Below, piece after piece: positions 18,937 to 57,041 of a stretch of 64,000 bases of DNA; positions within the stretch are counted from its first letter, which is position 1; each line of letters opens with the position of its first letter. The DNA is from Rebecca billardiae RCC1528. Taxonomy: Eukaryota > Protista > Haptophyta. The DNA is taken from the NCBI GenBank assembly GCA_965240325.2, contig OZ251226.1, positions 2,232,001 to 2,296,000 of the forward strand, given 5' to 3'. A program made the position numbers and the translations under genes. The notes under the pieces were generated by a model. The model was not told the DNA's origin, ran no database searches, and saw only the letters and a program-made list of their open reading frames with translations.

Positions 18937-19009
18937 TCCCGCGTAACTCAGTTGGTAGAGTGCTCGACCCTTAATCGATAAGCCATGGGTTCGAGCCCCA
19001 TCGTGGGAA
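18937..19009 (+). tRNA. tRNA-Lys (anticodon CTT), atypical
   Basis: 73-nt cloverleaf: acceptor TCCCGCG/CGTGGGA, D stem ACTC/GAGT, anticodon stem TCGA/TCGA with loop CC-CTT-AA, T arm ATGGG-TTCGAGC-CCCAT; TTTT just downstream. Confidence 0.8.
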
Positions 19010-46375: not shown

Positions 46376-46406
<31 letters not shown>

Positions 46407-46483
46407 TGCCGCGGCGGCGGCGTGGGTGGTTCGGCGGCGGGCGAACGCAGGCGGTGTCGGCCCCTTCGCACACCGAGCTGTAG
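45572..46483 (+). CDS. START-domain lipid-binding protein with signal peptide
   Basis: PWPVADRELL, HVRG, YVDPKGRLPTAFVNLI. Confidence 0.8.
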
Positions 46484-46937
46484 CGCAACATCTGCCACTG
46501 CGGCTGCGATGGCTTCCAGCCGCTTCGAGTTCGAGTTCGACGCGGTTCGCACATGTGTGACGATGCCATCATACGTGTGAACTGTGATGCCATGTGTGAT
46601 GAAGCTGCATAACTCAGTGGGACGTGTCACCGTCGTTCATGGCGACCGGCGGTCACTGGCAACACTGGATATCTGCTGCTGCTGAGTGCTGACGACATCA
46701 TCATCACTGATCGACTATACATTATAGCGGCGCAGCGCTGCGCGCGCTACTCGGTCTCGGTCTCGGCCACTCGCCACTCGGAGTCTGCTCGACTTCGAGT
46801 GAGTCGAGTGAGACAGTCGATCGTACGGCGTACCCGTTACCGGTCCGAGACGGTTCAGATGTGAGCCACTCAGCAGCGGTAGCTTACGTACTCGTAGACT
46901 ATGACACGAGTCATATACGACTCGTCGGAACGCGTAC

Positions 46938-48671
46938 CTACGGCTGCATCTGCGGCTCCACTGACGGCAACTCGATGTCGGGTGCGCACCGCGGGGCGGG
47001 TCGTGCTCCCACAACCTCGGCGGTGATGGCGCCATGCGCTGCGTCATCGGCATCGCCATTGGGGGGCATCGTCGACATTGCCGACTCTCCGCCGGACGTG
47101 TGCCCAGGTGCCATCACCATCTGGATCTCCCCGCCACCAACGCTGCATCCTACGGCGGCGGCACCGCACGAATCGGCAGCTGCCGAAGCATCGCCGTCGT
47201 GCCACCTGGCCACGTCCAGACTGCCTTCCAAGGGATCCGGATCGTGCAGCTGCCTGTGCGTGCGGCGTAGCGCTGTGCGGTCAACTGCTGCCGCTGACTC
47301 CGCGTGCGAGCTGCCAGCACTTTCGCCGTCGCTCGCCGTGGCATCGACGCATGCGCACACCACTGCGTCGCCGAGCACGTTCATGGCCGTCCTGAAGCGC
47401 TCGACCAGCCACTCGGAGCTGATCACGTACCCAAGCGCAGCCGTACTCGGCACCCCCGCAGCGCGCATGGTGATAGCATAGAGCACGAACCCCGCGCCCG
47501 GGATCGGCGCGGAGCCGACCGACAGCGCGCACGCGAGGACAACCACTGTCAGCCGGCCTGCGGCACCCATCGTGTGCACGTACCCGCTCGACGCGGCAAC
47601 GAAGAGCACGTTCAGCGTCGCGCCGATGGCGCCTCCGTCCATGTTCACCGTCGCGCCCAGCGGGAGCACGAATTCCACCGTTGAGCTGCGCAGGCCGAGC
47701 TCCTTGCAGCAGCGCTGCGTGGTGGGCAAGGTGGCGGCGCTGCTCGCGGTGGCAAAGGCGACCGCGACGGCGCGCGACATGCCGCGCAGGTACGCCCATG
47801 GCCTGCGCTGCTTGCCCACGACGCGCAGCAGCGCGCTCAGCGTGAGCGTGGCGTGCAGCGCATAGGCGAGCAGCTGAGCCAGCAGCAGCCGCGCCAGGGC
47901 CCCCAGCAGGCCAAAGACGTTGGTGCGCGCGACGCTGGCCGCGACGAGCGAGCACACGCCCAGTGGCGCGAGGACGACGAGGCGCTCAACCAGGTACAGC
48001 AGCGTCGTGCACACGCCGCGCGCATACTCGAGGAGCAGCGCCGCACCCGCGTCCGCGGCGGCGACCCCTGCCGCTGTGGGCGGCGGGGCGGCGCGAGCGC
48101 CCAGCTGAGCACGGACAGCAAGGCCTATGGCGACGCCGCTCGCGATGATCGAGAGCAGGTTGACCTCGGTCAGCGCGAGCAGCACGTTCTGAGGTACGAC
48201 GTCACGCCCCAGCCTCAGCAGCACTTCGGGCACGCTCACCGTGTCCATCGCGCCCGCGGCTGCTGCATTCTGCTTCGCACCGGCTGAAGGCGCGGCAGGG
48301 GCAGGCTCCTCGGCGGGCAGGTCGAGGTGCTCTCCCGGGCGCACGAGCTCGAAGACGGCGAGGGCCTCAAAGGCGGCGAGCACTGTCGTAAGCGCGTACA
48401 GGAGGACCGTCCGGCGCAGCTGAGCGGCCGAAATGGGCGTCTTTTCGTTCATCACGCACAGCATCAAGCTGAAAACAAACGGGCCAAGCACGCTCTTGAA
48501 CACGCGGATGAAGAGCTCGCCCGGGAAGGCGACGACACGGATGACATCGGTGGACGCGTCCGCATGCCGCACGCCCGCACCGATTGCCACGCCAAGCACG
48601 CACCCCGCAGACGTGGCGAGGGTGACGCCACATACGCCACATCGTCCCCTTCTCCAAAGGGCGGCCGCCAT
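46938..48671 (-). CDS. Dicarboxylate/amino acid:cation symporter (SLC1/EAAT-GltP family)
   Basis: FPGELFIRVFK, AFATASSAATLP, LPLGATVNMDG, ERFRTAMNVLGD. Confidence 0.93.
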   Translation of the reverse strand: MAAALWRRGRCGVCGVTLATSAGCVLGVAIGAGVRHADASTDVIRVVAFPGELFIRVFKSVLGPFVFSLMLCVMNEKTPISAAQLRRTVLLYALTTVLAAFEALAVFELVRPGEHLDLPAEEPAPAAPSAGAKQNAAAAGAMDTVSVPEVLLRLGRDVVPQNVLLALTEVNLLSIIASGVAIGLAVRAQLGARAAPPPTAAGVAAADAGAALLLEYARGVCTTLLYLVERLVVLAPLGVCSLVAASVARTNVFGLLGALARLLLAQLLAYALHATLTLSALLRVVGKQRRPWAYLRGMSRAVAVAFATASSAATLPTTQRCCKELGLRSSTVEFVLPLGATVNMDGGAIGATLNVLFVAASSGYVHTMGAAGRLTVVVLACALSVGSAPIPGAGFVLYAITMRAAGVPSTAALGYVISSEWLVERFRTAMNVLGDAVVCACVDATASDGESAGSSHAESAAAVDRTALRRTHRQLHDPDPLEGSLDVARWHDGDASAAADSCGAAAVGCSVGGGEIQMVMAPGHTSGGESAMSTMPPNGDADDAAHGAITAEVVGARPAPRCAPDIELPSVEPQMQP

Positions 48672-49263
48672 CGTCGAACCTACCTTTGGCGGGCTACTTC
48701 CATACTTGTACCAGTATCTACGGTACTTACCTACAAGTTACGGCACACCGTTACACGCTGCAGTAAGCCGCGCTCACTGCTGGTACCTGGGACCACCCCA
48801 CAGTGTTGGGCTTGTATGCTGTCGGCAATGGCATACCCCCGCCCCCTCTGGAGGCGGGCTGTCCACAGCGGAGTGGTGTCAAGGCACTTGGTGTATCGGT
48901 CAGTGGTTTGAGGTTGGGTGAGGGTGGTGGTTGGTTGGGGGCTGGCCAGGGTAGGGCTGGAGGCTTCGGCCGCCAGTCTGATCACCCGGAGCCCGTTATA
49001 AAGGGGAATTTACAGTTACTTTACCTTAGAGGGATCCACCTTGCTCCTAGCAATAATGAATGATTGGCCGCTCAGGATTTCATGGGAACCCGTCATCAAT
49101 CAAGCTTCATTCCGCAACGGCAAATTGCTCCGGGCAGCACGTTATAAAGGGGAATTTAAAAAAGCAAGGTGACGATCGGTGACGACGACAGGCGCGGGCG
49201 CGCCCGGCCGGAAGGACGCTACCGGAGCGCTCCGGCTGGCTGTCGCTAGGCGGGCGTGATATC

Positions 49264-50344
49264 ATGCTGTGCGTTGACTCCGTCCACGTCGAACCGCGCG
49301 TGCGCGGGCGCAGCCGCGCCCTCACGCCAGCACGCTCACGCCCACGGGCGTGATCGCTCGCCACCTCTCGCGCACAGGAAGTGGATCGAGCTCTTCGACG
49401 AGTGCGTCAAGACGGATGGATGGGGCCAGCAGATAGAGGCGGCCGAGCTGTACAGAAAGCTGCGACGAGCGCTCGAGCTGCACCCCGTGGAGGGCCCTCA
49501 CGCGGCGCTCCTGGCGGACACATTACTCGCGCTTCGGTTGCGCATCTCTGCGATCGAGGGCCTGCAGGGCTCGCCCGGCCTGACTCTCGACGACGTCCGG
49601 CTTCTCCGGCCGGTTATCGGTGCATTGCAGACACCGGGCGCATCCGCGCTGCCAACGTTTCCTCTCGATCTGACGGCGCACGGTGGCATGCGTTCGAGCG
49701 GTGGTGGTGCAGAGCATGCGCAAGCGCAGCCCTCTAGCGGTGGCCACAGCCAACTGGCGCCGTCGGACATCGAGCCACACGGCGCAGCCGCGGCGCAGCC
49801 GAGCGCACCGGAGCGAGACAGGGGGGAGCCGGCCGCGCCGCGCAAGCTGGTTGAACACAACGGAGAGCCGATCAGCGTGGTGGTTGAGCGCGCCGGCTTC
49901 AAGGACGCCGGTGCCTTCATCGACCCCTTCGTCGTCGTCTCCGTGTACCGCGCCGATGGGACGCTCGACTGGGTGGAGCCGCCGCGCGAGACGGCCCGGT
50001 CGTCGCGCAGGGAGGGCCAGCACATTCTCTTCAACGAGACCGTGCAGCTTCAAACCGACTTGATCGGCGGCTTTCTGGCGGGGGAGCGCAAGTCGATCAT
50101 CTTCGAGTTCAAGCACTTCAAGCCGAGTAAGAACAAGATCTCGACCAAGTGCTGGACCTTCATCGACGTGGGCACGCTCGCGCAGGACCACGACAAGCGC
50201 GAGGTGGCGATGCAGCTCGAGTGGTATCAAAAGCCGACTGACTACAAGCGCAAGCGGCTGCGCCTCCTCACCGTGAAGCCGCTCTTCCTGCACGTGGCCT
50301 TCGTGTTCCAAGCCACGAAGGCCTCAGCACCTGGCCAACACTAG
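49264..50344 (+). CDS. AIDA: Axin interactor, dorsalization-associated (AIDA) protein with C2 domain
   Basis: DGWGQQIEAAELY (Aida N-terminus); IIFEFKHFKPSKNKISTKCW and YQKPTDYKRKRLRLLTVKPLFLH (Aida C2). Probable ATGCT micro-exon 49264-49268, intron 49269-49377. Confidence 0.88.
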
Positions 50345-51652: not shown

Positions 51653-52189
51653 ATGCCTGACCTCGGCGCCATCCACCAGAAGTACGGCCCGATGAGCTAC
51701 AACGATGTACGCAGCCACCGCGCACGCGTTCATCGCCCTTCTACCCCCCCGCGCGCGCGCGCCCTCCCCCCCCCCGCGCACGCGCGCGCTCGCATCGCGC
51801 GCGCGACGCTGACCAGTTTGCGATGCGCGCGCGCCGCCTGATGCCTCCCTCGTGCGCAGGCGCAGAAGTGGTGCCACCGGATCAGCGGCTCGGACCCGTC
51901 GGCCGAGATCATGGAGTGGTCGACGCGGAAGGAGTACCAGCTCCTCAACGATCTCGCGCAGGGCGACGACGTGTGGGTCGGTTTCACTGACTGGGGCCAC
52001 CCGGGCATCTGGGCGGATGGCAAGGGCAAGGGCAAGCCGGAGTACGTCCCGTTTTTCGCCGGCTACGAGGTGCTGCTCGACGCCAACACGCACCCGACCG
52101 CGGACTGCGCCTACTTCGAGGCCGTCTCGTCGGAGGTGAAGCTCGGCGACTGCCTGGACGCGACGAAGTTCTTCTACTGCGACGAGTAA
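51653..52189 (+). CDS. Single-domain C-type lectin-like protein, copy 1 (127 aa)
   Basis: Exons 51653-51706 and 51860-52189; MSYNDAQKWC, VWVG, ADCAYF, GDC..KFFYCDE; four CTLD cysteines. Confidence 0.85.
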
Positions 52190-52567
52190 GTGTATCGCAT
52201 GACTCACGCAGAGGACGACGCGGCACCGACGATGCCGCCCGCGGCCTGCACCGGCCCGGGCGATCTGCTTCGTCAACATGCCCGAGCCCGCGATCCACCT
52301 GTGCGCCGGGGCTGGCCCCGACGATCTGTGGACACGGTGCTGCGGACGAGCCTCGGAGGCATGGCGGCGCCGAATCGCATCCAGTGTGCGTCAGGCCGCA
52401 GATGATCTCGCACCACCGCGGCTCATCAGCGGCGCAGACGACGCCGGGGGCGCATCGGCTGACACTTGCCATCTGTTTTTAATAATGTGCAGACTTAGAT
52501 CTCTTTTTCACCAGCATAGCTAAGCCTCATGGCAGCTGTGAGTTACACAGCGCGCTGAGCCTGAGTA

Positions 52568-54664
52568 CCAGGTGGAGAAGTCATATGCGTGAGTCGGCGG
52601 TCTGACGCCGGCCGCGCCTTAGACCGCTCTACCCGGTCTCCAATTGATTTCAGGGTCAAGTTGTCGAACACACGCAACCGTACGCCCCGCGATTGGGGCT
52701 TATGGTCATTTTTGAGCCTAGACTTCTCAGCGGCTTCTTATGTTGTACCGGTTGGACGCTTGCATTCTTCCCTAATCGTGCCGAATCATCGGCGGAATCT
52801 TGGGGGCCTCCATCATCCGCAAAACGAGTTCGTCCATAGGGCTATTCAGGGTCGGTGTACTAGCTCCTCTCAACGCATTCAGGCTGCGCGGTGTGTTTGC
52901 GCTAACCTGATTGGCCCGAGGAAACCCATGTTTTCAGTTTCACCGCTGTTCTCGCCCTCGCCGCAAGCCGCTCGAGAGTGGGCGGGGCCGCAGCTGAGTC
53001 CGCTGACGAAAGGGCGGCCCGCTGCCGCGGCGCCTCACCGCCAGGCCGCCTGGCACTAGCGTGAGGGTCAAGCCAGTCTGAGCAGCTCAGCTGGGCTGAG
53101 CAGGGCATCTTGCGGCTATGCACCGACGCACGCTTGCTGATGGCTCACGTCTGCACGGCAGCCGCTGACGCGCCGGCGGCGGGAGCCGCCGCAAAGAGGT
53201 CGGCATCGACCGTCACGACTTTGAAGCGGCGGTTGAGCGCACGCTGCTGCTCGAGGTTGCGACCGGGCGGGAAGATGTGCTCGTAGGGGTACTGCATGGC
53301 CAGATTTGTCGTGAACACGCGTGGCATGTCTGCGGGGATCTTGGCATTCGTGTAGCGCGTGTGCACCGATCGCTCGTAGTTGGGGTCGAGCATCTTGATC
53401 ACGGCCTTGGCCGTCATGTGCGTGAAATCCATGTCGTCGAAGACGATACCGTCGTTGCGAGCCGTCAAATCCTTCAGGTCATCCATCTCGGACACGAGAA
53501 GAGGGTTCTCGAAGTGCGACAGCCCGAACTCCGTCTTGCCGTGGCCGGATCCACCTGCGAGCACGACAGCCATCCCATCAGAGAGGTCGAGCGGCAGTCG
53601 CGCAAACGAGCTCATGGCGAAGCGCGGCGTGACGCCGCTGCCGTGTCGGTGGCGGATCATGGCGAGCACGGCATGGCCGTAGCGGTAGTAGATCGACGGG
53701 TGCTCGCACTGCAAGATGTCCGCTGCCTCGTCTGCAGACTGTGCTGCGTGCAGCGCGCGCGCCCAGTCGACGCCGCACACGTGCTCTGGAATGGTTGCCC
53801 AGTTGGCGCTGATGATGAAGTTGGACGGCCCCTCCTTCTGGCAGTAGTGGATGCACTTCGCCAGGTCACGCTTCGTCGGGCCCATCGGCTCGTGGTACGC
53901 TCGCAGCGTGCCCCAGCCCTGGAGGGGGAGGTCAAAGGCTGTGACCAGGCAGTCCGTCTTCATCTCCGATCCGATGACGGCGTGGAAGTGCCAAGCGCGG
54001 CTGAGTATTGTGCGGCGGGCTTGCGGCGGGCGGGGTACGGAAGGCCAATAGTGGCGTCGAGGGTGCCGTCTCTAGTGAATGATATGTGCCCGCCGGCCGC
54101 CGGCGTAACTAAGTAGGGACTAGCACTTCTTGACTTGGCGGAGTGGCGGACACATACAGCTTGATGCTATTGCTACTTGCATGATTATGGCCGGTCTGCC
54201 GTCGAGCGAGCGTGCGCAACTAAACTGCATAGGTAGCTCACCCACCGCCGGCCCGCCACAGACTGTACCGTACCCCACCGACAAAACCGCTTCGCCGCCC
54301 GCCCCAACAGCGCGCGCGCCGTGGAACGGCATCCATGACCTTTTGGTTCGGAACGAGCGGACCAGAATGGAATCCGTCTCGTCTGGAGAAAGCGCTCGCT
54401 TTCAATCAAAAACTTTCGTCGGATTCGCTTTTGGACGCTCGCTGACGAGGCAGACTATCATGGACCCAAGAGGGCTTGTGGGCGCTCAGGATTCAGATAG
54501 TATGACTGCGTACCCAAGATCTTGCGTGTGCGTATGTCCGAAAAGGACATGGTTCACGTGTTCAGTAATCACCCACCCGCGTGTCCTTAAGTGAAAGGCG
54601 GCCCCCCGGATGGTGTTTCCCTAAAGCGCGGCTGCCGGTTCAGGCAGGGCGTGCGGCCACCTGG
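52568..54664. mobile_element. ~2.1-kb TIR-bounded element with TA flanks, carrying a CRESS-type Rep
   Basis: Left TA|CCAGGTGG (52566-52575), right CCACCTGG|TA (54657-54666), plus imperfect subterminal inverted similarity (GTCTGACGCCGGCCGCGCCTTAG vs GCCTGAACCGGCAGCCGCGCTTTAG). Confidence 0.55.
53145..54002 (-). CDS. rep: CRESS DNA virus-like replication initiator Rep (HUH endonuclease + SF3 helicase), 5' end unresolved
   Basis: RCR motif II WHFHA (53979-53993, in frame upstream of the listed ATG), motif III YCQKEG, Walker A GGSGHGKT, Walker B IVFDDM, motif C VFTTN, Arg finger ALNRRF. In-frame stop at 54072-54074; motif I not found. Confidence 0.9.
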   Translation of the reverse strand, partial: SRAWHFHAVIGSEMKTDCLVTAFDLPLQGWGTLRAYHEPMGPTKRDLAKCIHYCQKEGPSNFIISANWATIPEHVCGVDWARALHAAQSADEAADILQCEHPSIYYRYGHAVLAMIRHRHGSGVTPRFAMSSFARLPLDLSDGMAVVLAGGSGHGKTEFGLSHFENPLLVSEMDDLKDLTARNDGIVFDDMDFTHMTAKAVIKMLDPNYERSVHTRYTNAKIPADMPRVFTTNLAMQYPYEHIFPPGRNLEQQRALNRRFKVVTVDADLFAAAPAAGASAAAVQT

Positions 54665-57041
54665 TAGTAATGGCCTACTGAGTACTGAGTCTGAGTACTG
54701 GCTACTCTACATCGGCATTTGTGGCAGTTGTCTGCGGCCAGCCACACAGCACACTCACAGCCGGCCGGGACCGTCACACCGACTGGCCGGCGGCGCCGTG
54801 AAGCCGAGCCACGCCGCTGCCACGCCTGCAGAGTGCAGTCGCTGTTGTTGATCTTACGAGTCTGTAGGCTACTTCGCATTGTTGCCGAGCTGCCCGGTGA
54901 TGCGTCCGGACAGGACTGGATCGGCGATGCGCTCGGCGGAATCGACTGGCTGTGACAGCGCCGCATCATTAGACTCGGCGGCCCGCTGGCGTCCGCGGGC
55001 GCGGGAGACTACTGAGCCAGACGGCCTGCCGCCCCCGCGGCCAGACGGGCCGCCCGCTCGGAGGCGCCCGGGGTCGCCGGGGTCGGGCCGCGGGCGCCGG
55101 CCCGGGCCCGCCGCCGGGCTCGGGGCGTGCGCGCCTCCGCCTTCGACGTCGGCGGCGCCGCCTCGGGCTCGGGCAGAAGAGCTCTGGCTCGGTGAGGCCC
55201 CTCACGCTGTCGTCTGTCCTTCTCGCCGCAGCTGACAATGCGAGTATCCCAACCGCGTGGCATCGGTCCTGATCCAAGTGCTCGGGCAGGCTGCGGGCTG
55301 ATTACGCCCTCATTCACGAGGTGGGCGCCTTGCGACCGAGCGCGTGCCGTGCCGTCCGTGCGCGCGCGCACCACGGTGATGATCGCATGTGTCATCGTGA
55401 GGACCTCCGGTGCGTCAATATCCGTCAGCTAGACAGTACCGTAGTGCTCGTGTTCGGATGCCTCAGCCTGGGGCACCTCCCCTTCGGCTTGGCCTCGCGT
55501 GGAGGTCGGGGCGCCGTCACCCGTGCTGCCATCAATCAGAATCGCCGCCGTCCGTTCGTTTGACTTTTGACAGACAGGCTTGCGCAGTCCCAGTAGTTCG
55601 CGACATACGGTCACTTGCGAGCAGATCCGCCGGGCAGGCGGCGATTGATTGACGTAGTCCAACTCGGCCAGCCGGCTGCATCCGTCACCAATACTCACTA
55701 CTCACAGGCTACGTCTGGCACGCCCGACTGACTCGTCGGCATGCGCCGGTGCTGCGAGGCTGTCTCGTGCACAGATGCGCGCGCGCGAGCGGGGTGACTG
55801 GAATTTGGGGGCGGTGTATCCTCGATGCTCTCGGCAAGCGCACCTGCGCAGTGGCATCGCATCTACCTCAGTACGCGTGCAGTTTGCGGCTGCGTGCGCC
55901 TTGCGCGGCCGTTCTCTGGCCATGGGCGTCACGGCCGAGCGACACCACGCGGTCGGCGCGTGCTGGGAGCAGATGTGGCGTGGCGCACCGCCGTCCATGT
56001 GCGCGGCTGCGCGCTTGTGAGGGCCTGCCCAGCCACCGCGCACCTGGCTGGGCGGCGCGCACGCGCTGCCGCAAACCTCAGCTCGTTGCTGCCCGGCCTG
56101 TGCGGCGTGCTCGTGCGTTCGTCCGCCACACTGCTCGAAGGCTCTCTCTGCCGCTCCATCCCGGCTTGTGCGCCTTTGTCCAGTGCCGTGTCCTGATGCA
56201 AGACATTGCGGCGGCTTTCGCGGCAGCACTCGGCTCGGGCTGGCCCGAGCGCGCGTGTGTGGCCAAAGGCATCATGACTCCATCGCTCTCGGCCGCACTC
56301 TCAGCCCACAAACTGCCCAGGGCAGGCTGCGTCAGGGAGCGACGCGATGCGCGCTGCTCGACAGCCGGCTCTACTGCCGCACGACTTGACGCGCACCACG
56401 GCAGACCCGCGCGGTGGTGCGCGCGTGAGCCTGCTCGAGCTCAACAGAAGTATACTCTCGCCATCCGGCACGGCGAGGAGCCGCATGTGGCCACACGGCA
56501 CGGCTGTCCCGCCGTCACACGCCCGACGCCGTCGGCGGCGAGGGCGGCGAGGCCGGGCACGGCCGACCTCCCCGGTCCTACCGTTTCAGTCCGGGCAGGG
56601 CGAGCTGGAGCTCCAACCAGCGCTCCGGGGCCGACGACGGGGCTTTGTGAGCTCCTTGGCACCCTTTCAGCCCTTTCGCGAAGGCACCCCAATGCAGCGA
56701 CGCAGCACACCTTCGATGCCCTTCCTGGCCAAGAATCTTCTGCCATGATTCCCGCATCCACACAGTCCAGACGCTTGCCGAGTGGACCGTCCGGGTGGGC
56801 CGATCCCGCGGGCGTGAAAGTTGAGCACCGGGTAAGTCTGAGTGAAGTCAAAAGTCAAGGCGTGAATAGGAGGGATGAACGGTGTACAATCATCCCAAGT
56901 TTACAGGCTGCGCAGGCGCTCACTTTCCACGGCCCCGGACGGGCCAGGCTGCGGATGCGCGCCACAGCAATCAGCAAGGTCCGAAGGTGCCGTCCCTCCT
57001 CCTCGTCGTAAGTCCCTCCTCCCCACACACTTTCTGCAACC

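What the first reader, a model, noticed from the sequence alone, without database searches (positions are those of the whole stretch)
52566..54666. CRESS-virus Rep inside a mariner-like TIR element with no transposase
Seen: the ORF has HUH motif II (WHFHA), motif III (YCQKEG) and a complete, undisrupted SF3 helicase. It lies within a 2097-bp segment bounded by TA|CCAGGTGG and CCACCTGG|TA, with further imperfect inverted similarity ~25-55 bp inward. Known: TA duplication with CCAGGTG termini is the Tc1/mariner pattern (the Mos1 left end starts CCAGGTG), and HUH+SF3 Reps define CRESS ssDNA viruses, unlike Helitrons, which use an SF1 helicase. Inference: a chimeric element, either a non-autonomous cut-and-paste transposon that captured an ssDNA-virus Rep, or a Rep-driven element with TIRs. 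It would also record CRESS infection of this algal lineage. No capsid ORF or canonical nonanucleotide stem-loop was seen.
Basis: partly seen in the sequence, partly recalled or inferred. Interest (0 to 1): 0.85.

Follow-up and report, generated by a model that had tools for sequence, protein, structure and literature searches.

The report
Decayed Rep gene in inverted-repeat insertion
A roughly 2.1-kb insertion in this GC-rich eukaryotic (probably algal) genome carries a partly broken replication gene of the kind used by small circular ssDNA viruses. Its intact relatives in marine metagenomes sit in short, capsid-less, inverted-repeat-bounded units found in several flanking contexts, so this is most likely a fossil of a little-known integrating element, not a mariner transposon.

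Summary
A CRESS-type Rep frame lies on the minus strand (Rep-homologous region 53145-54116). It has motif II, motif III and an uninterrupted SF3 helicase, inside a 2097-bp stretch with TA+CCAGGTGG / CCACCTGG+TA ends.

- The N-terminal nuclease part is broken.
- The 10-bp inverted repeat alone is at chance level: 72% of shuffles and 96-98% of real-sequence controls do as well, or 3% if TA is required.

There is no transposase, capsid, origin-like hairpin or second copy.

Related sequences shift the picture. The closest Reps (35-56% identity; marine and salt-marsh metagenomes) lie in 1.7-2.6-kb Rep-only units. These are bounded by significant 15-45-nt inverted repeats with TA- or TTAA-type ends. 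Three lineages occur in several flanking contexts at 98.9-100% identity, and two have piggyBac-like ends. In the window, a 13-nt direct repeat flanks the segment (1/500 shuffles), which marks a true insertion.

Best reading: a decayed, inactive copy of this Rep-only integrating element family (confidence 0.55). A mariner affiliation is not supported: the two ends share only 8 nt, and only the left end weakly resembles Mos1. A plain viral fragment with a chance repeat remains possible (0.3).

Interest 0.6; new variant of a known kind.

The parts
52555..52567 (+). Left copy of a 13-nt flanking direct repeat (CTGAGCCTGAGTA). It abuts the segment and overlaps the left TA.
   Evidence: Best direct match between the 60-nt outer flanks; 1 of 500 shuffles reaches it. 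The degenerate 14-mer has only these two exact hits in 64 kb.
52566..52575 (+). Left end: TA followed by the 8-nt inverted-repeat arm CCAGGTGG.
   Evidence: Real, but at chance level as a flanking inverted repeat.
52568..54664 (.).
   Evidence: GC is 0.615 against 0.679 for the window. Flanked by direct repeats. No other copy in the window.
52589..53059 (+). 156-aa ORF convergent with Rep. No homologue and no family match, so probably not a gene.
52606..52622 (+). Left arm of the weak subterminal inverted match (partner at 54621-54637).
   Evidence: 17 nt, 82%. Local score 21, reached by 7% of control pairs.
53145..54116 (-). Rep gene remnant (323 codons plus stop). It comprises a broken N-terminal HUH nuclease part and an uninterrupted SF3 helicase part (core about 53178-53594). 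The longest open stretch is 53145-54071.
   Evidence: Breaks lie only in the N-terminal part: one in-frame stop inside the homologous region and one in the leader just upstream, one deletion of about 20-30 codons, one insertion of about 10 codons, and no frameshift seen. GC3 is 0.82, like host genes.
54621..54637 (+). Right arm of the weak subterminal inverted match.
54657..54666 (+). Right end: the 8-nt arm CCACCTGG followed by TA.
   Evidence: It lies about 540 nt upstream of the motif I remnant, within the 519-624 nt range seen in three relatives (my measurement from the coordinates).
54676..54700 (+). Short tandem repeat (TACTGAG, 3.7 copies). It contains the right copy of the flanking direct repeat (54685-54697).

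Best explanation
The segment is an insertion of about 2.1 kb. It lies about 380 nt downstream of a C-type-lectin-like terminal exon, in a short low-complexity stretch.

It carries a decayed copy of a capsid-less, Rep-only element. The Rep belongs to the CRESS-type HUH+SF3 family. Intact members of its clade lie in 1.7-2.6-kb units. Each unit holds one Rep gene, usually a strong hairpin just upstream of it, and terminal inverted repeats of 15-45 nt ending in TA- or TTAA-type junctions. The same units occur at 98.9-100% identity in different flanking contexts, and one appears in circular or tandem form.

Shown: the nature of the Rep, its breaks, the flanking direct repeat, and the architecture and multiple contexts of the relatives.

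Inferred: (1) the window copy descends from such a unit and its TA+8-nt ends are the remains of its termini; (2) in the family, the Rep and hairpin form a rolling-circle replication module for a free form, while the inverted-repeat ends serve chromosomal integration. Integration is most likely carried out by a DDE transposase supplied in trans (piggyBac-like ends in two lineages, TA-type ends in others), and less likely by Rep itself.

The window copy is inactive. Its nuclease part is broken, the upstream hairpin is absent, and the ends barely match.
For: REP IDENTITY. Best relatives are 56% and 53% identical. 1540 library proteins have E<=0.001, but only two clusters exceed 50% identity. Pfam hits Gemini_AL1 or Viral_Rep in 27 of 39 relatives. 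Catalytic columns are kept and the fold is SF3-like.

INVERTED REPEATS IN RELATIVES.
- L001: 435-466 / 2133-2164, 32 nt, 84%.
- L003: 179-206 / 2020-2047, 28 nt, 89%.
- L005: 46-90 / 2608-2651, z=22.7.
- P0019 units: 1710 bp, TTAA+CCCC... / ...GGGG+TTAA.
- P0014 unit in L075: 31-34 nt.

MULTIPLE CONTEXTS. L001 and L002 are 98.9% identical and diverge exactly at the left repeat start. P0019 has at least 4 left and 3 right flanks. P0008 has 4 right flanks after ...GGG+TTAA. P0014 has 3 right flanks.

PIGGYBAC HALLMARKS. These are TTAA duplication, 12-19-bp repeats and CCC/GGG ends (PMC5381638).

INTERNAL HAIRPINS. Folding z-scores run from -5 to -13, and three lineages share an apex motif.

WINDOW. 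Flanking direct repeat at 1/500 shuffles, paralleled by a 23-nt one around the L075 unit at 0/500. TA-started 10-mer at 3%. The right end sits at the family-typical distance from motif I. Unit length of 2097 bp is within the family range. The close clade is absent from the viral contig collection, and no capsid was found anywhere in it.
Against: In the window the inverted repeat is no better than chance, and the ends match over only 8 nt. The shortest family repeat seen is 15 nt.

Neutral decay strong enough to erase a 15-45-nt repeat should also have hit the 308-codon open frame. GC-rich DNA does keep frames open, though: the antisense strand has a 279-aa ORF.

The left end lies 577 nt beyond the Rep stop, against 139-335 nt in relatives.

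Outside Rep there is no sequence similarity between the window and any relative, and the conserved hairpin motif is absent.

No second copy was found in the window or in any collection searched.

The relatives' hosts are unknown. Some of their 'different contexts' may be assembly chimeras or variable spacers of free forms.

Ends resembling two or three different transposon superfamilies on one Rep clade are awkward for the in-trans transposase reading.
Confidence: 0.55

Rival explanations
1. Plain endogenous viral fragment. A piece of a CRESS-like replicon was captured once at a chromosome break by non-homologous or microhomology-mediated repair. The TA+8-nt inverted repeat is a coincidence.
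For: The inverted repeat is at chance level and does not extend. There is a single copy. The nuclease part is broken. No hairpin, capsid or transposase was found. Truncated and degraded Rep insertions are the usual state of such sequences (PMC3198968). A 13-nt flanking repeat also fits microhomology repair.
Against: All five close lineages with enough flank have significant terminal inverted repeats. The window's repeat sits at the family-typical distance upstream of motif I, ends in TA like three relatives, and gives a family-typical unit length.
Confidence: 0.3
2. One reading: a non-autonomous Tc1/mariner-family cut-and-paste element (TA duplication, CCAGGTG ends) that captured a Rep gene.
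For: TA is present on both sides. The Mos1 5' ITR does start with CCAGGTG (PMC3419177). The left end matches it at 12 of the first 15 nt, and 9 of 21 beyond position 7 (3.6% of random 21-mers do as well). Relatives L001, L005 and P0014 have TA-type junctions with 28-45-nt repeats. A TIR transposon carrying a geminivirus-like Rep is on record in Tuber (PMC3198968).
Against: The right end matches Mos1 at only 2 of 21 nt beyond position 7. The two ends share only 8 nt, against 28 nt in Mos1. There is no transposase remnant. No other element with these ends exists in the window. TA cannot be told apart from the outer bases of the repeat. Two sister lineages have TTAA/CCC-GGG ends and one has CAAA flanks.
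Confidence: 0.15
3. Rep-driven element. The inverted repeats are the two halves of a stem in a circular form, and integration happens by Rep nicking or by recombination within the spacer between the arms. This leaves the arms at the ends and short direct repeats outside them.
For: Rep is the only gene in every unit. L077 has a 31-nt end overlap, placing the two arms 49 nt apart in a circular or tandem form. L075 and the window both have 13-23-nt direct repeats just outside the arms. L070 carries a 269-nt left-end fragment that stops inside the internal hairpin. Joined ends would give palindromes with A/T-rich centres.
Against: Known HUH transposons (IS200/IS605, IS91, Helitrons, Replitrons) have no long terminal inverted repeats or TTAA-type duplications. 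The strong internal hairpin next to Rep is the better origin candidate. P0019 and P0008 have unrelated flanks directly outside TTAA.
Confidence: 0.2
4. Host-co-opted gene. The helicase half, read from the internal ATG (272 aa), is kept by selection for a cellular function.
For: There is no stop or frameshift in 308 codons. GC3 of 0.82 equals that of host genes. All ATPase motifs are kept. Conserved and expressed Rep-derived genes are known (PMC3198968).
Against: Long open frames are common in this 68% GC DNA: 73 ORFs of at least 220 aa in 64 kb, including the Rep antisense strand. No identical or near-identical protein is on record, although a neighbouring gene's transcript-like contigs are. 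No orthologue was found in any other genome.
Confidence: 0.07
5. Assembly chimera or contaminant contig piece.
For: None positive. The possibility arises only because a single copy cannot be cross-checked here.
Against: Host-like GC3. Related low-complexity sequence lies on both sides. The eukaryotic gene context is continuous. Parts of the window are 100% identical to independent run assemblies.
Confidence: 0.02

Closest known systems
Endogenous Rep sequences of circular ssDNA (CRESS-type) viruses in eukaryotic genomes (Liu et al. 2011, PMC3198968)
   Same: An HUH+SF3 Rep homologue lies in nuclear DNA, partly degraded, single copy, in non-coding DNA next to host genes.
   Different: The closest relatives are not capsid-bearing circular genomes. 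They are Rep-only units with terminal inverted repeats in several contexts. The window copy has candidate ends and flanking direct repeats.
Geminivirus-like TIR transposon of Tuber melanosporum (Liu et al. 2011, PMC3198968)
   Same: A geminivirus-like Rep lies inside a unit with terminal inverted repeats, and the unit is multicopy in a eukaryote.
   Different: The Tuber element has 37-bp TIRs, two transposase ORFs and 42 copies. The units here carry Rep alone and are 1.7-2.6 kb. The window copy is single, with an 8-nt repeat.
piggyBac and Tc1/mariner non-autonomous elements
   Same: Short terminal inverted repeats and no transposase. Two relatives have TTAA with CCC/GGG ends. The window and three relatives have TA-type junctions.
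   Different: The cargo is a replication initiator with an origin-like hairpin. End types differ between sister lineages. In the window the ends match over 8 nt only, and no matching autonomous element is known.
Replitrons and Helitrons (Craig 2023, PMC10288648)
   Same: Eukaryotic (including algal) mobile elements that encode a Rep-class HUH nuclease.
   Different: Replitron proteins have no helicase, and the elements have short terminal direct repeats. Helitrons have a two-tyrosine Rep fused to an SF1 helicase. Neither has TTAA- or TA-flanked inverted repeats.
Parvovirus-type replicons (an HUH+SF3 protein acting on inverted terminal repeats)
   Same: The gene-plus-ends logic is the same: an HUH+SF3 protein between inverted terminal repeats, with a chromosomal integrated state. 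The fold search returned AAV Rep and B19 NS1 helicases among the SF3 matches.
   Different: There is no capsid gene, the units are much shorter, the nuclease domain is geminivirus/circovirus-like by Pfam, and there is no evidence of terminal hairpins at molecule ends.
Teratorn (a piggyBac transposon fused with a herpesvirus; PMC10175614, abstract only, seen)
   Same: A precedent for a viral replication system riding on piggyBac-type ends.
   Different: Teratorn is 180 kb and carries its own transposase. The units here are under 3 kb with no transposase.

Membership tests
CRESS-type Rep (HUH single-tyrosine nuclease + SF3 helicase) | Motif II (HUH) and motif III (catalytic Tyr, YxxK) | tested here: met
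   H28, Y76 and K79 are invariant or at least 90% conserved across 40 sequences.
CRESS-type Rep (HUH single-tyrosine nuclease + SF3 helicase) | Intact motif I and a complete nuclease fold | tested here: not met
   The open frame lacks the motif I column. Only a remnant lies upstream, and the part is broken. pLDDT is below 50 for residues 1-98.
CRESS-type Rep (HUH single-tyrosine nuclease + SF3 helicase) | SF3 helicase with Walker A, Walker B, motif C and Arg finger | tested here: met
   G173/K179/T180, D212/D213, N256 and R282 are present. The fold matches SF3 helicases.
CRESS-type Rep (HUH single-tyrosine nuclease + SF3 helicase) | Curated family model hit | tested here: inconclusive
   The window protein has only weak hits (Gemini_AL1_M E=0.2). 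Among the 39 relatives, 14 hit Gemini_AL1 and 13 hit Viral_Rep.
Cressdnaviricota virus genome | Capsid gene and circular genome with an origin stem-loop | tested here: not met
   No capsid-like ORF or family hit. No significant hairpin. Close relatives also lack a capsid. I did not test for the canonical loop motif, because no motif was taken from memory.
Tc1/mariner element | TA target-site duplication | tested here: inconclusive
   TA is present on both sides, but it is equally readable as the outer bases of the palindromic repeat. No empty site was available.
Tc1/mariner element | Two similar terminal inverted repeats of about 20-30 bp | tested here: not met
   The ends match over 8 nt, then 7 of the next 20. 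The Mos1 ITRs are 28 nt.
Tc1/mariner element | DDE/D transposase, or other copies mobilised in trans with the same ends | tested here: not met
   No transposase remnant in any frame. No other copy of the ends in the window or in viral contigs. The rest of the genome was not available.
piggyBac-type ends (relatives only) | TTAA duplication, 12-19-bp repeats, CCC/GGG termini | tested here: met
   The P0019 units and the P0008 right end show these features, against the criteria in PMC5381638. The window has TA, not TTAA, so it does not meet them.
Helitron | Two-tyrosine Rep fused to an SF1 (Pif1-like) helicase | tested here: not met
   The helicase is SF3-like, and only a single conserved Tyr column is seen.
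Replitron | Rep as the only domain (no helicase); short terminal direct repeats | tested here: not met
   A helicase is present.
Rep-only inverted-repeat-bounded units (the clade defined here) | Significant terminal inverted repeats of at least 15 nt around the Rep gene | tested here: not met
   The window's best flanking inverted repeat is 10 nt, at chance level. Relatives give z=8 to 23.
Rep-only inverted-repeat-bounded units (the clade defined here) | Rep of the same clade, family-typical unit length and end position, A/T-type junction | tested here: met
   53-56% identity to the L001 and L003 Reps. 2097 bp against 1693-2606 bp. The right end lies about 540 nt from motif I, against 519-624 nt. 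TA junction.
Rep-only inverted-repeat-bounded units (the clade defined here) | Strong hairpin just upstream of Rep | tested here: not met
   Window z=-1.2, against -5 to -13 in relatives. The apex motif is absent.

The most novel reading that the evidence does not exclude
The window holds a fossil of an undescribed class of small eukaryotic mobile replicons. These are capsid-less units of 1.7-2.6 kb that combine a CRESS-type rolling-circle replication module (an HUH+SF3 Rep plus an origin-like hairpin) with transposon-type ends (TA or TTAA junctions and short inverted repeats). Such an element could persist both as a free replicon and as a chromosomal insertion. The window would give this class, so far seen only in marine metagenomes, its first identifiable host genome.
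Probability: 0.35. Interest if true: 0.8.

Novelty: new variant of a known kind. Interest (0 to 1): 0.6.

Why it matters
Rep genes of small ssDNA viruses are known as genomic fossils, and HUH nucleases are known to drive Helitrons and Replitrons. A full HUH+SF3 Rep carried alone between transposon-like inverted repeats is barely documented; I found one fungal case, and that one carries transposase genes.

If the family reading holds, it points to a route by which virus- or plasmid-type replicons and cut-and-paste transposons exchange modules. It also places one host of an otherwise host-less marine element clade in a GC-rich alga-like eukaryote. The question becomes answerable by plain genome comparison: copy census, empty sites, and matching of ends to resident transposases.

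If it fails, the locus is an ordinary decayed viral gene fragment.

Tried and rejected
SEARCHES THAT FOUND NOTHING
- Exact look-ups of the Rep ORF and of a neighbouring ORF.
- Single-protein scans of metagenome and viral contigs.
- The left-terminus 24-mer in viral contigs.
- A homologue search with the 156-aa ORF.
- Pfam on every stop-free piece of at least 45 aa in the non-Rep parts, and PHROGs.
- Sequence search of solved structures gave only His-tag noise.

TESTS THAT DID NOT SUPPORT A STRUCTURE
- Small hairpins at 52597-52627 and 54330-54445 fold no better than shuffles.
- A wider search for better inverted repeats, up to 3 kb out, found nothing above background.
- tblastx of relatives against the rest of the window gave only low-complexity noise.

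READINGS REJECTED
- Helitron and Replitron membership (wrong helicase, or helicase present).
- A complete integrated virus (no capsid anywhere in the clade).
- Contamination (host-like GC3, continuous context).

STEPS LEFT OUT ON PURPOSE
- I built no consensus of the related units.
- I did not search for the canonical origin loop motif, because no motif may be taken from memory.
- One call failed on a frame with stops; I re-sent it without that item.

SLIPS, DECLARED
- I reasoned about where the in-frame stops lie in the translated frame.

SCOPE OF FETCHED SEQUENCES
- The 58 loci came from a profile scan of metagenomes of unknown sample type. Beyond the close clade I used them only for length, GC, end-overlap and inverted-repeat statistics.
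- I did not seek or recognise any named virus of animals, people or crops, and I took no contig for human.

Full report
1. WHAT IS IN THE WINDOW

The minus strand carries an ATG ORF of 272 aa (53145-53963) inside a 308-codon open frame (53145-54071).

The frame's best relatives in a 5.8-billion-protein collection are two metagenome proteins: P0001 at 56% identity and P0002 at 53%. An exhaustive search of 1.84 billion cluster representatives gives 1540 proteins at E<=0.001, but only these two clusters exceed 50% identity.

Pfam does not recognise the window protein on its own. Among its 39 closest representatives, however, 14 match the geminivirus Rep catalytic domain, 13 match the circovirus-type Viral_Rep domain and 5 match the geminivirus Rep central domain.

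In the 40-sequence alignment the following are invariant or at least 90% conserved, and all are present in the window: the HUH histidine, the motif III Tyr and Lys, Walker A and B, motif C and the arginine finger.

A model built on the 8-sequence alignment is confident only for the helicase half. That half matches SF3/AAA+ helicases in the PDB, including a circovirus Rep ATPase domain at TM 0.62-0.65.

The open frame starts after the position where relatives have motif I. A recognisable remnant of that motif lies further upstream in the same frame, which extends the Rep-homologous region to 53145-54116.

The N-terminal nuclease part is broken. It has one in-frame stop inside the homologous region and another in the leader just upstream. 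Relative to the closest proteins it also has one deletion of about 20-30 codons and one insertion of about 10 codons. I saw no frameshift. The helicase part has no break.

The long open frame is weak evidence of selection. This 68% GC window has 73 ORFs of at least 220 aa, including a 279-aa ORF antisense to Rep. GC3 of the Rep frame is 0.82, the same as a neighbouring host gene at 0.81.

3. THE ENDS

TACCAGGTGG occurs exactly twice in the window, in inverted orientation, at 52566-52575 and 54657-54666.

As evidence for a transposon this is weak:
- A perfect 10-bp inverted repeat between the two 1-kb flanks of a 0.9-kb core occurs in 72% of dinucleotide shuffles and in 274 of 285 real-sequence controls from the same window.
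- Requiring it to start with TA leaves 3%.
- With 700-nt flanks, 98% of controls have an inverted match at least as good.
- Past the 8 nt the ends do not match each other (7 of 20).

But only the window's left end resembles it further (12 of the first 15 nt; 9 of 21 beyond position 7, which 3.6% of random 21-mers reach). The right end matches at 2 of 21.

No frame of the non-Rep parts matches any Pfam family. The 156-aa ORF has no homologue. There is no second copy in the window.

4. EVIDENCE THAT THE STRETCH IS AN INSERTION

Just outside the ends lies a 13-nt direct repeat: 52555-52567, abutting the left end, and 54685-54697, which is 20 nt beyond the right end and inside a short TACTGAG tandem repeat. 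Only 1 of 500 shuffles of the 60-nt outer flanks gives as good a match.

Either the DNA was inserted into a small low-complexity array, or the repeat was made or used during insertion.

The surroundings are eukaryotic:
- a C-type-lectin-like terminal exon ending at 52189 (E=8e-4, just under Pfam's cut-off);
- an Aida-like gene at 49256-50344;
- a sodium:dicarboxylate symporter gene at 46938-48671.

The symporter region is 100% identical to 2.4-kb contigs assembled from two public runs. Its nearest named homologue is a haptophyte protein at only 39%, so 'alga' is plausible but not shown.

No Rep-like protein from this organism is on record, although the neighbour's is. This is a weak hint that the Rep is not expressed.

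5. RELATIVES CHANGE THE PICTURE

The distant relatives match only the helicase half. Many lie on circular contigs of 1.7-6.9 kb with GC 0.40-0.50, which are ordinary small circular replicons.

The relatives that match the full length are different. Their contigs have GC 0.51-0.61, with one exception they are not circular by end overlap, they have no capsid-like second gene, and they are absent from the viral contig collection.

In every lineage with enough flank, the Rep gene is bracketed by a significant inverted repeat:
- L001: 32 nt, 84%, unit 1730 bp.
- L003: 28 nt, 89%, unit 1869 bp, with CAAA on both sides.
- L005: up to 45 nt, z=22.7, unit 2606 bp.
- The P0019 lineage: unit 1710 bp with TTAA+CCCC... 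/ ...GGGG+TTAA ends.
- The P0014 lineage: 31-34 nt, unit about 1693 bp.

The units occur in different contexts:
- L001 and L002 are 98.9% identical over 1727 bp and diverge exactly at the first base of the left repeat.
- P0019 units at 99.9-100% identity have at least four different left and three different right flanks.
- P0008 copies (99.2-100% identical) share a right end ...GGG+TTAA followed by four different flanks.
- P0014 has three right flanks.

The piggyBac hallmarks are TTAA duplication, 12-19-bp repeats and CCC/GGG termini (PMC5381638).

Most units also have a very stable hairpin just upstream of Rep (z from -5 to -13). Three lineages share the same apex motif.

Three oddities:
- One P0014 contig (L077) has a 31-nt end overlap that places the two arms 49 nt apart, as in a circular or tandem form.
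- One P0019 contig (L070) has an extra 269-nt left-end fragment that stops inside the hairpin.
- The L075 unit is flanked, like the window's, by an imperfect direct repeat (23 nt, 0/500 shuffles).

6. INTERPRETATION

The window's Rep belongs to a clade carried by Rep-only, inverted-repeat-bounded units that have moved.

Features of the window stretch that fit the family:
- its length;
- the distance of its right end from motif I (about 540 nt, against 519-624 nt in three relatives);
- its TA-type junction;
- its flanking direct repeat.

Features that do not fit:
- the length of its inverted repeat;
- the missing hairpin;
- the 577-nt tail beyond the Rep stop.

I therefore read it as a decayed, inactive copy of such an element (0.55). 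A one-off viral fragment with a chance repeat is the main rival (0.3).

For the family, I think the likeliest working model is a two-module element. In this model the Rep and hairpin replicate a free form. The ends are used for chromosomal integration, most likely by a DDE transposase supplied in trans. Rep-mediated or recombinational integration of a circular form is the alternative. None of this is shown. The variety of end types within one Rep clade is unexplained.

The mariner label is not supported as membership. 'CRESS virus infection' overstates what a capsid-less clade can show.

7. COMPARISON WITH WHAT IS KNOWN

Degraded Rep insertions are common (PMC3198968). The same paper describes a Tuber transposon with a geminivirus-like Rep, 37-bp TIRs and transposase ORFs. 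Replitrons encode a Rep without a helicase and have terminal direct repeats. Helitrons use an SF1 helicase. Four full-text searches on this theme turned up no description of Rep-only HUH+SF3 units with TA/TTAA-type inverted-repeat ends. That search is limited to open literature.

Noticed in passing
L077:1-31 and 1742-1772; spacer about 1669-1717: This P0014-lineage contig has a 31-nt terminal direct overlap. The right and left inverted-repeat arms of the unit lie 49 nt apart, as in a 1741-nt circle or a head-to-tail tandem. The spacer contains a small A/T-rich palindrome.
   Followed up: partly
L070:221-489 and 549-817: A 269-nt copy of the unit's left end lies 59 nt upstream of a full P0019 unit. 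It starts at a proper TTAA end and stops inside the 3' arm of the internal hairpin. It could be a one-ended replication or termination product, a deletion derivative or an assembly effect.
   Followed up: partly
L001:658-680, L005:1166-1187, L064:357-376 (also L004, L065-L068): The hairpins upstream of Rep in three lineages, whose Reps are only about 35-55% identical to the window's, share the apex AAAAGGT-N(4-12)-ACCTTTT. This suggests a conserved origin-like site. It is absent from the window, L003 and the P0019 units.
   Followed up: partly
L075:157-179 and 1885-1907: A 23-nt imperfect direct repeat (21/23) containing GGAATTCC lies 10 nt before and 2 nt after the inverted-repeat-bounded unit. 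This parallels the 13-nt repeat around the window's segment.
   Followed up: partly
L005:60-180 and 2530-2640: Several copies of a TGTAAT(TTCATGG)-like motif lie inside both ends of the unit. They resemble the subterminal binding-site repeats of transposons, or iterons.
   Followed up: no
L010, L051 and L060, contig ends: Perfect 15-20-nt inverted repeats lie exactly at both contig ends of three distant relatives. They may be assembly artefacts or true linear ends.
   Followed up: no
window 46385-48804: The sodium:dicarboxylate symporter gene region is 100% identical to two 2.4-kb contigs assembled from runs ERR14847151 and ERR14847148. Both contigs start at 48804 and end in a GGC repeat, which looks like a transcript. 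So independent reads of the same organism are public.
   Followed up: partly
window 49256-50344 (+) and 51860-52189 (+): An Aida-like gene (Aida_C2 E=1e-34, Aida_N E=7e-11) and a C-type-lectin-like terminal exon (E=8e-4) lie upstream of the insertion. This confirms a eukaryotic nuclear context.
   Followed up: yes
window 18937-19009 (+): A tRNA-Lys (CTT) gene, the only Rfam or ARAGORN hit in the window.
   Followed up: yes
window 53277-54116 (+): A 279-aa ORF runs antisense to Rep. It illustrates how easily long open frames arise in this GC-rich DNA and is not evidence of a gene.
   Followed up: yes
L002:1834-1937 (-): The flank next to the truncated right end of the L002 unit has an open frame that reads like part of a cellular protein and ends at the junction. 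It is too short to test.
   Followed up: no
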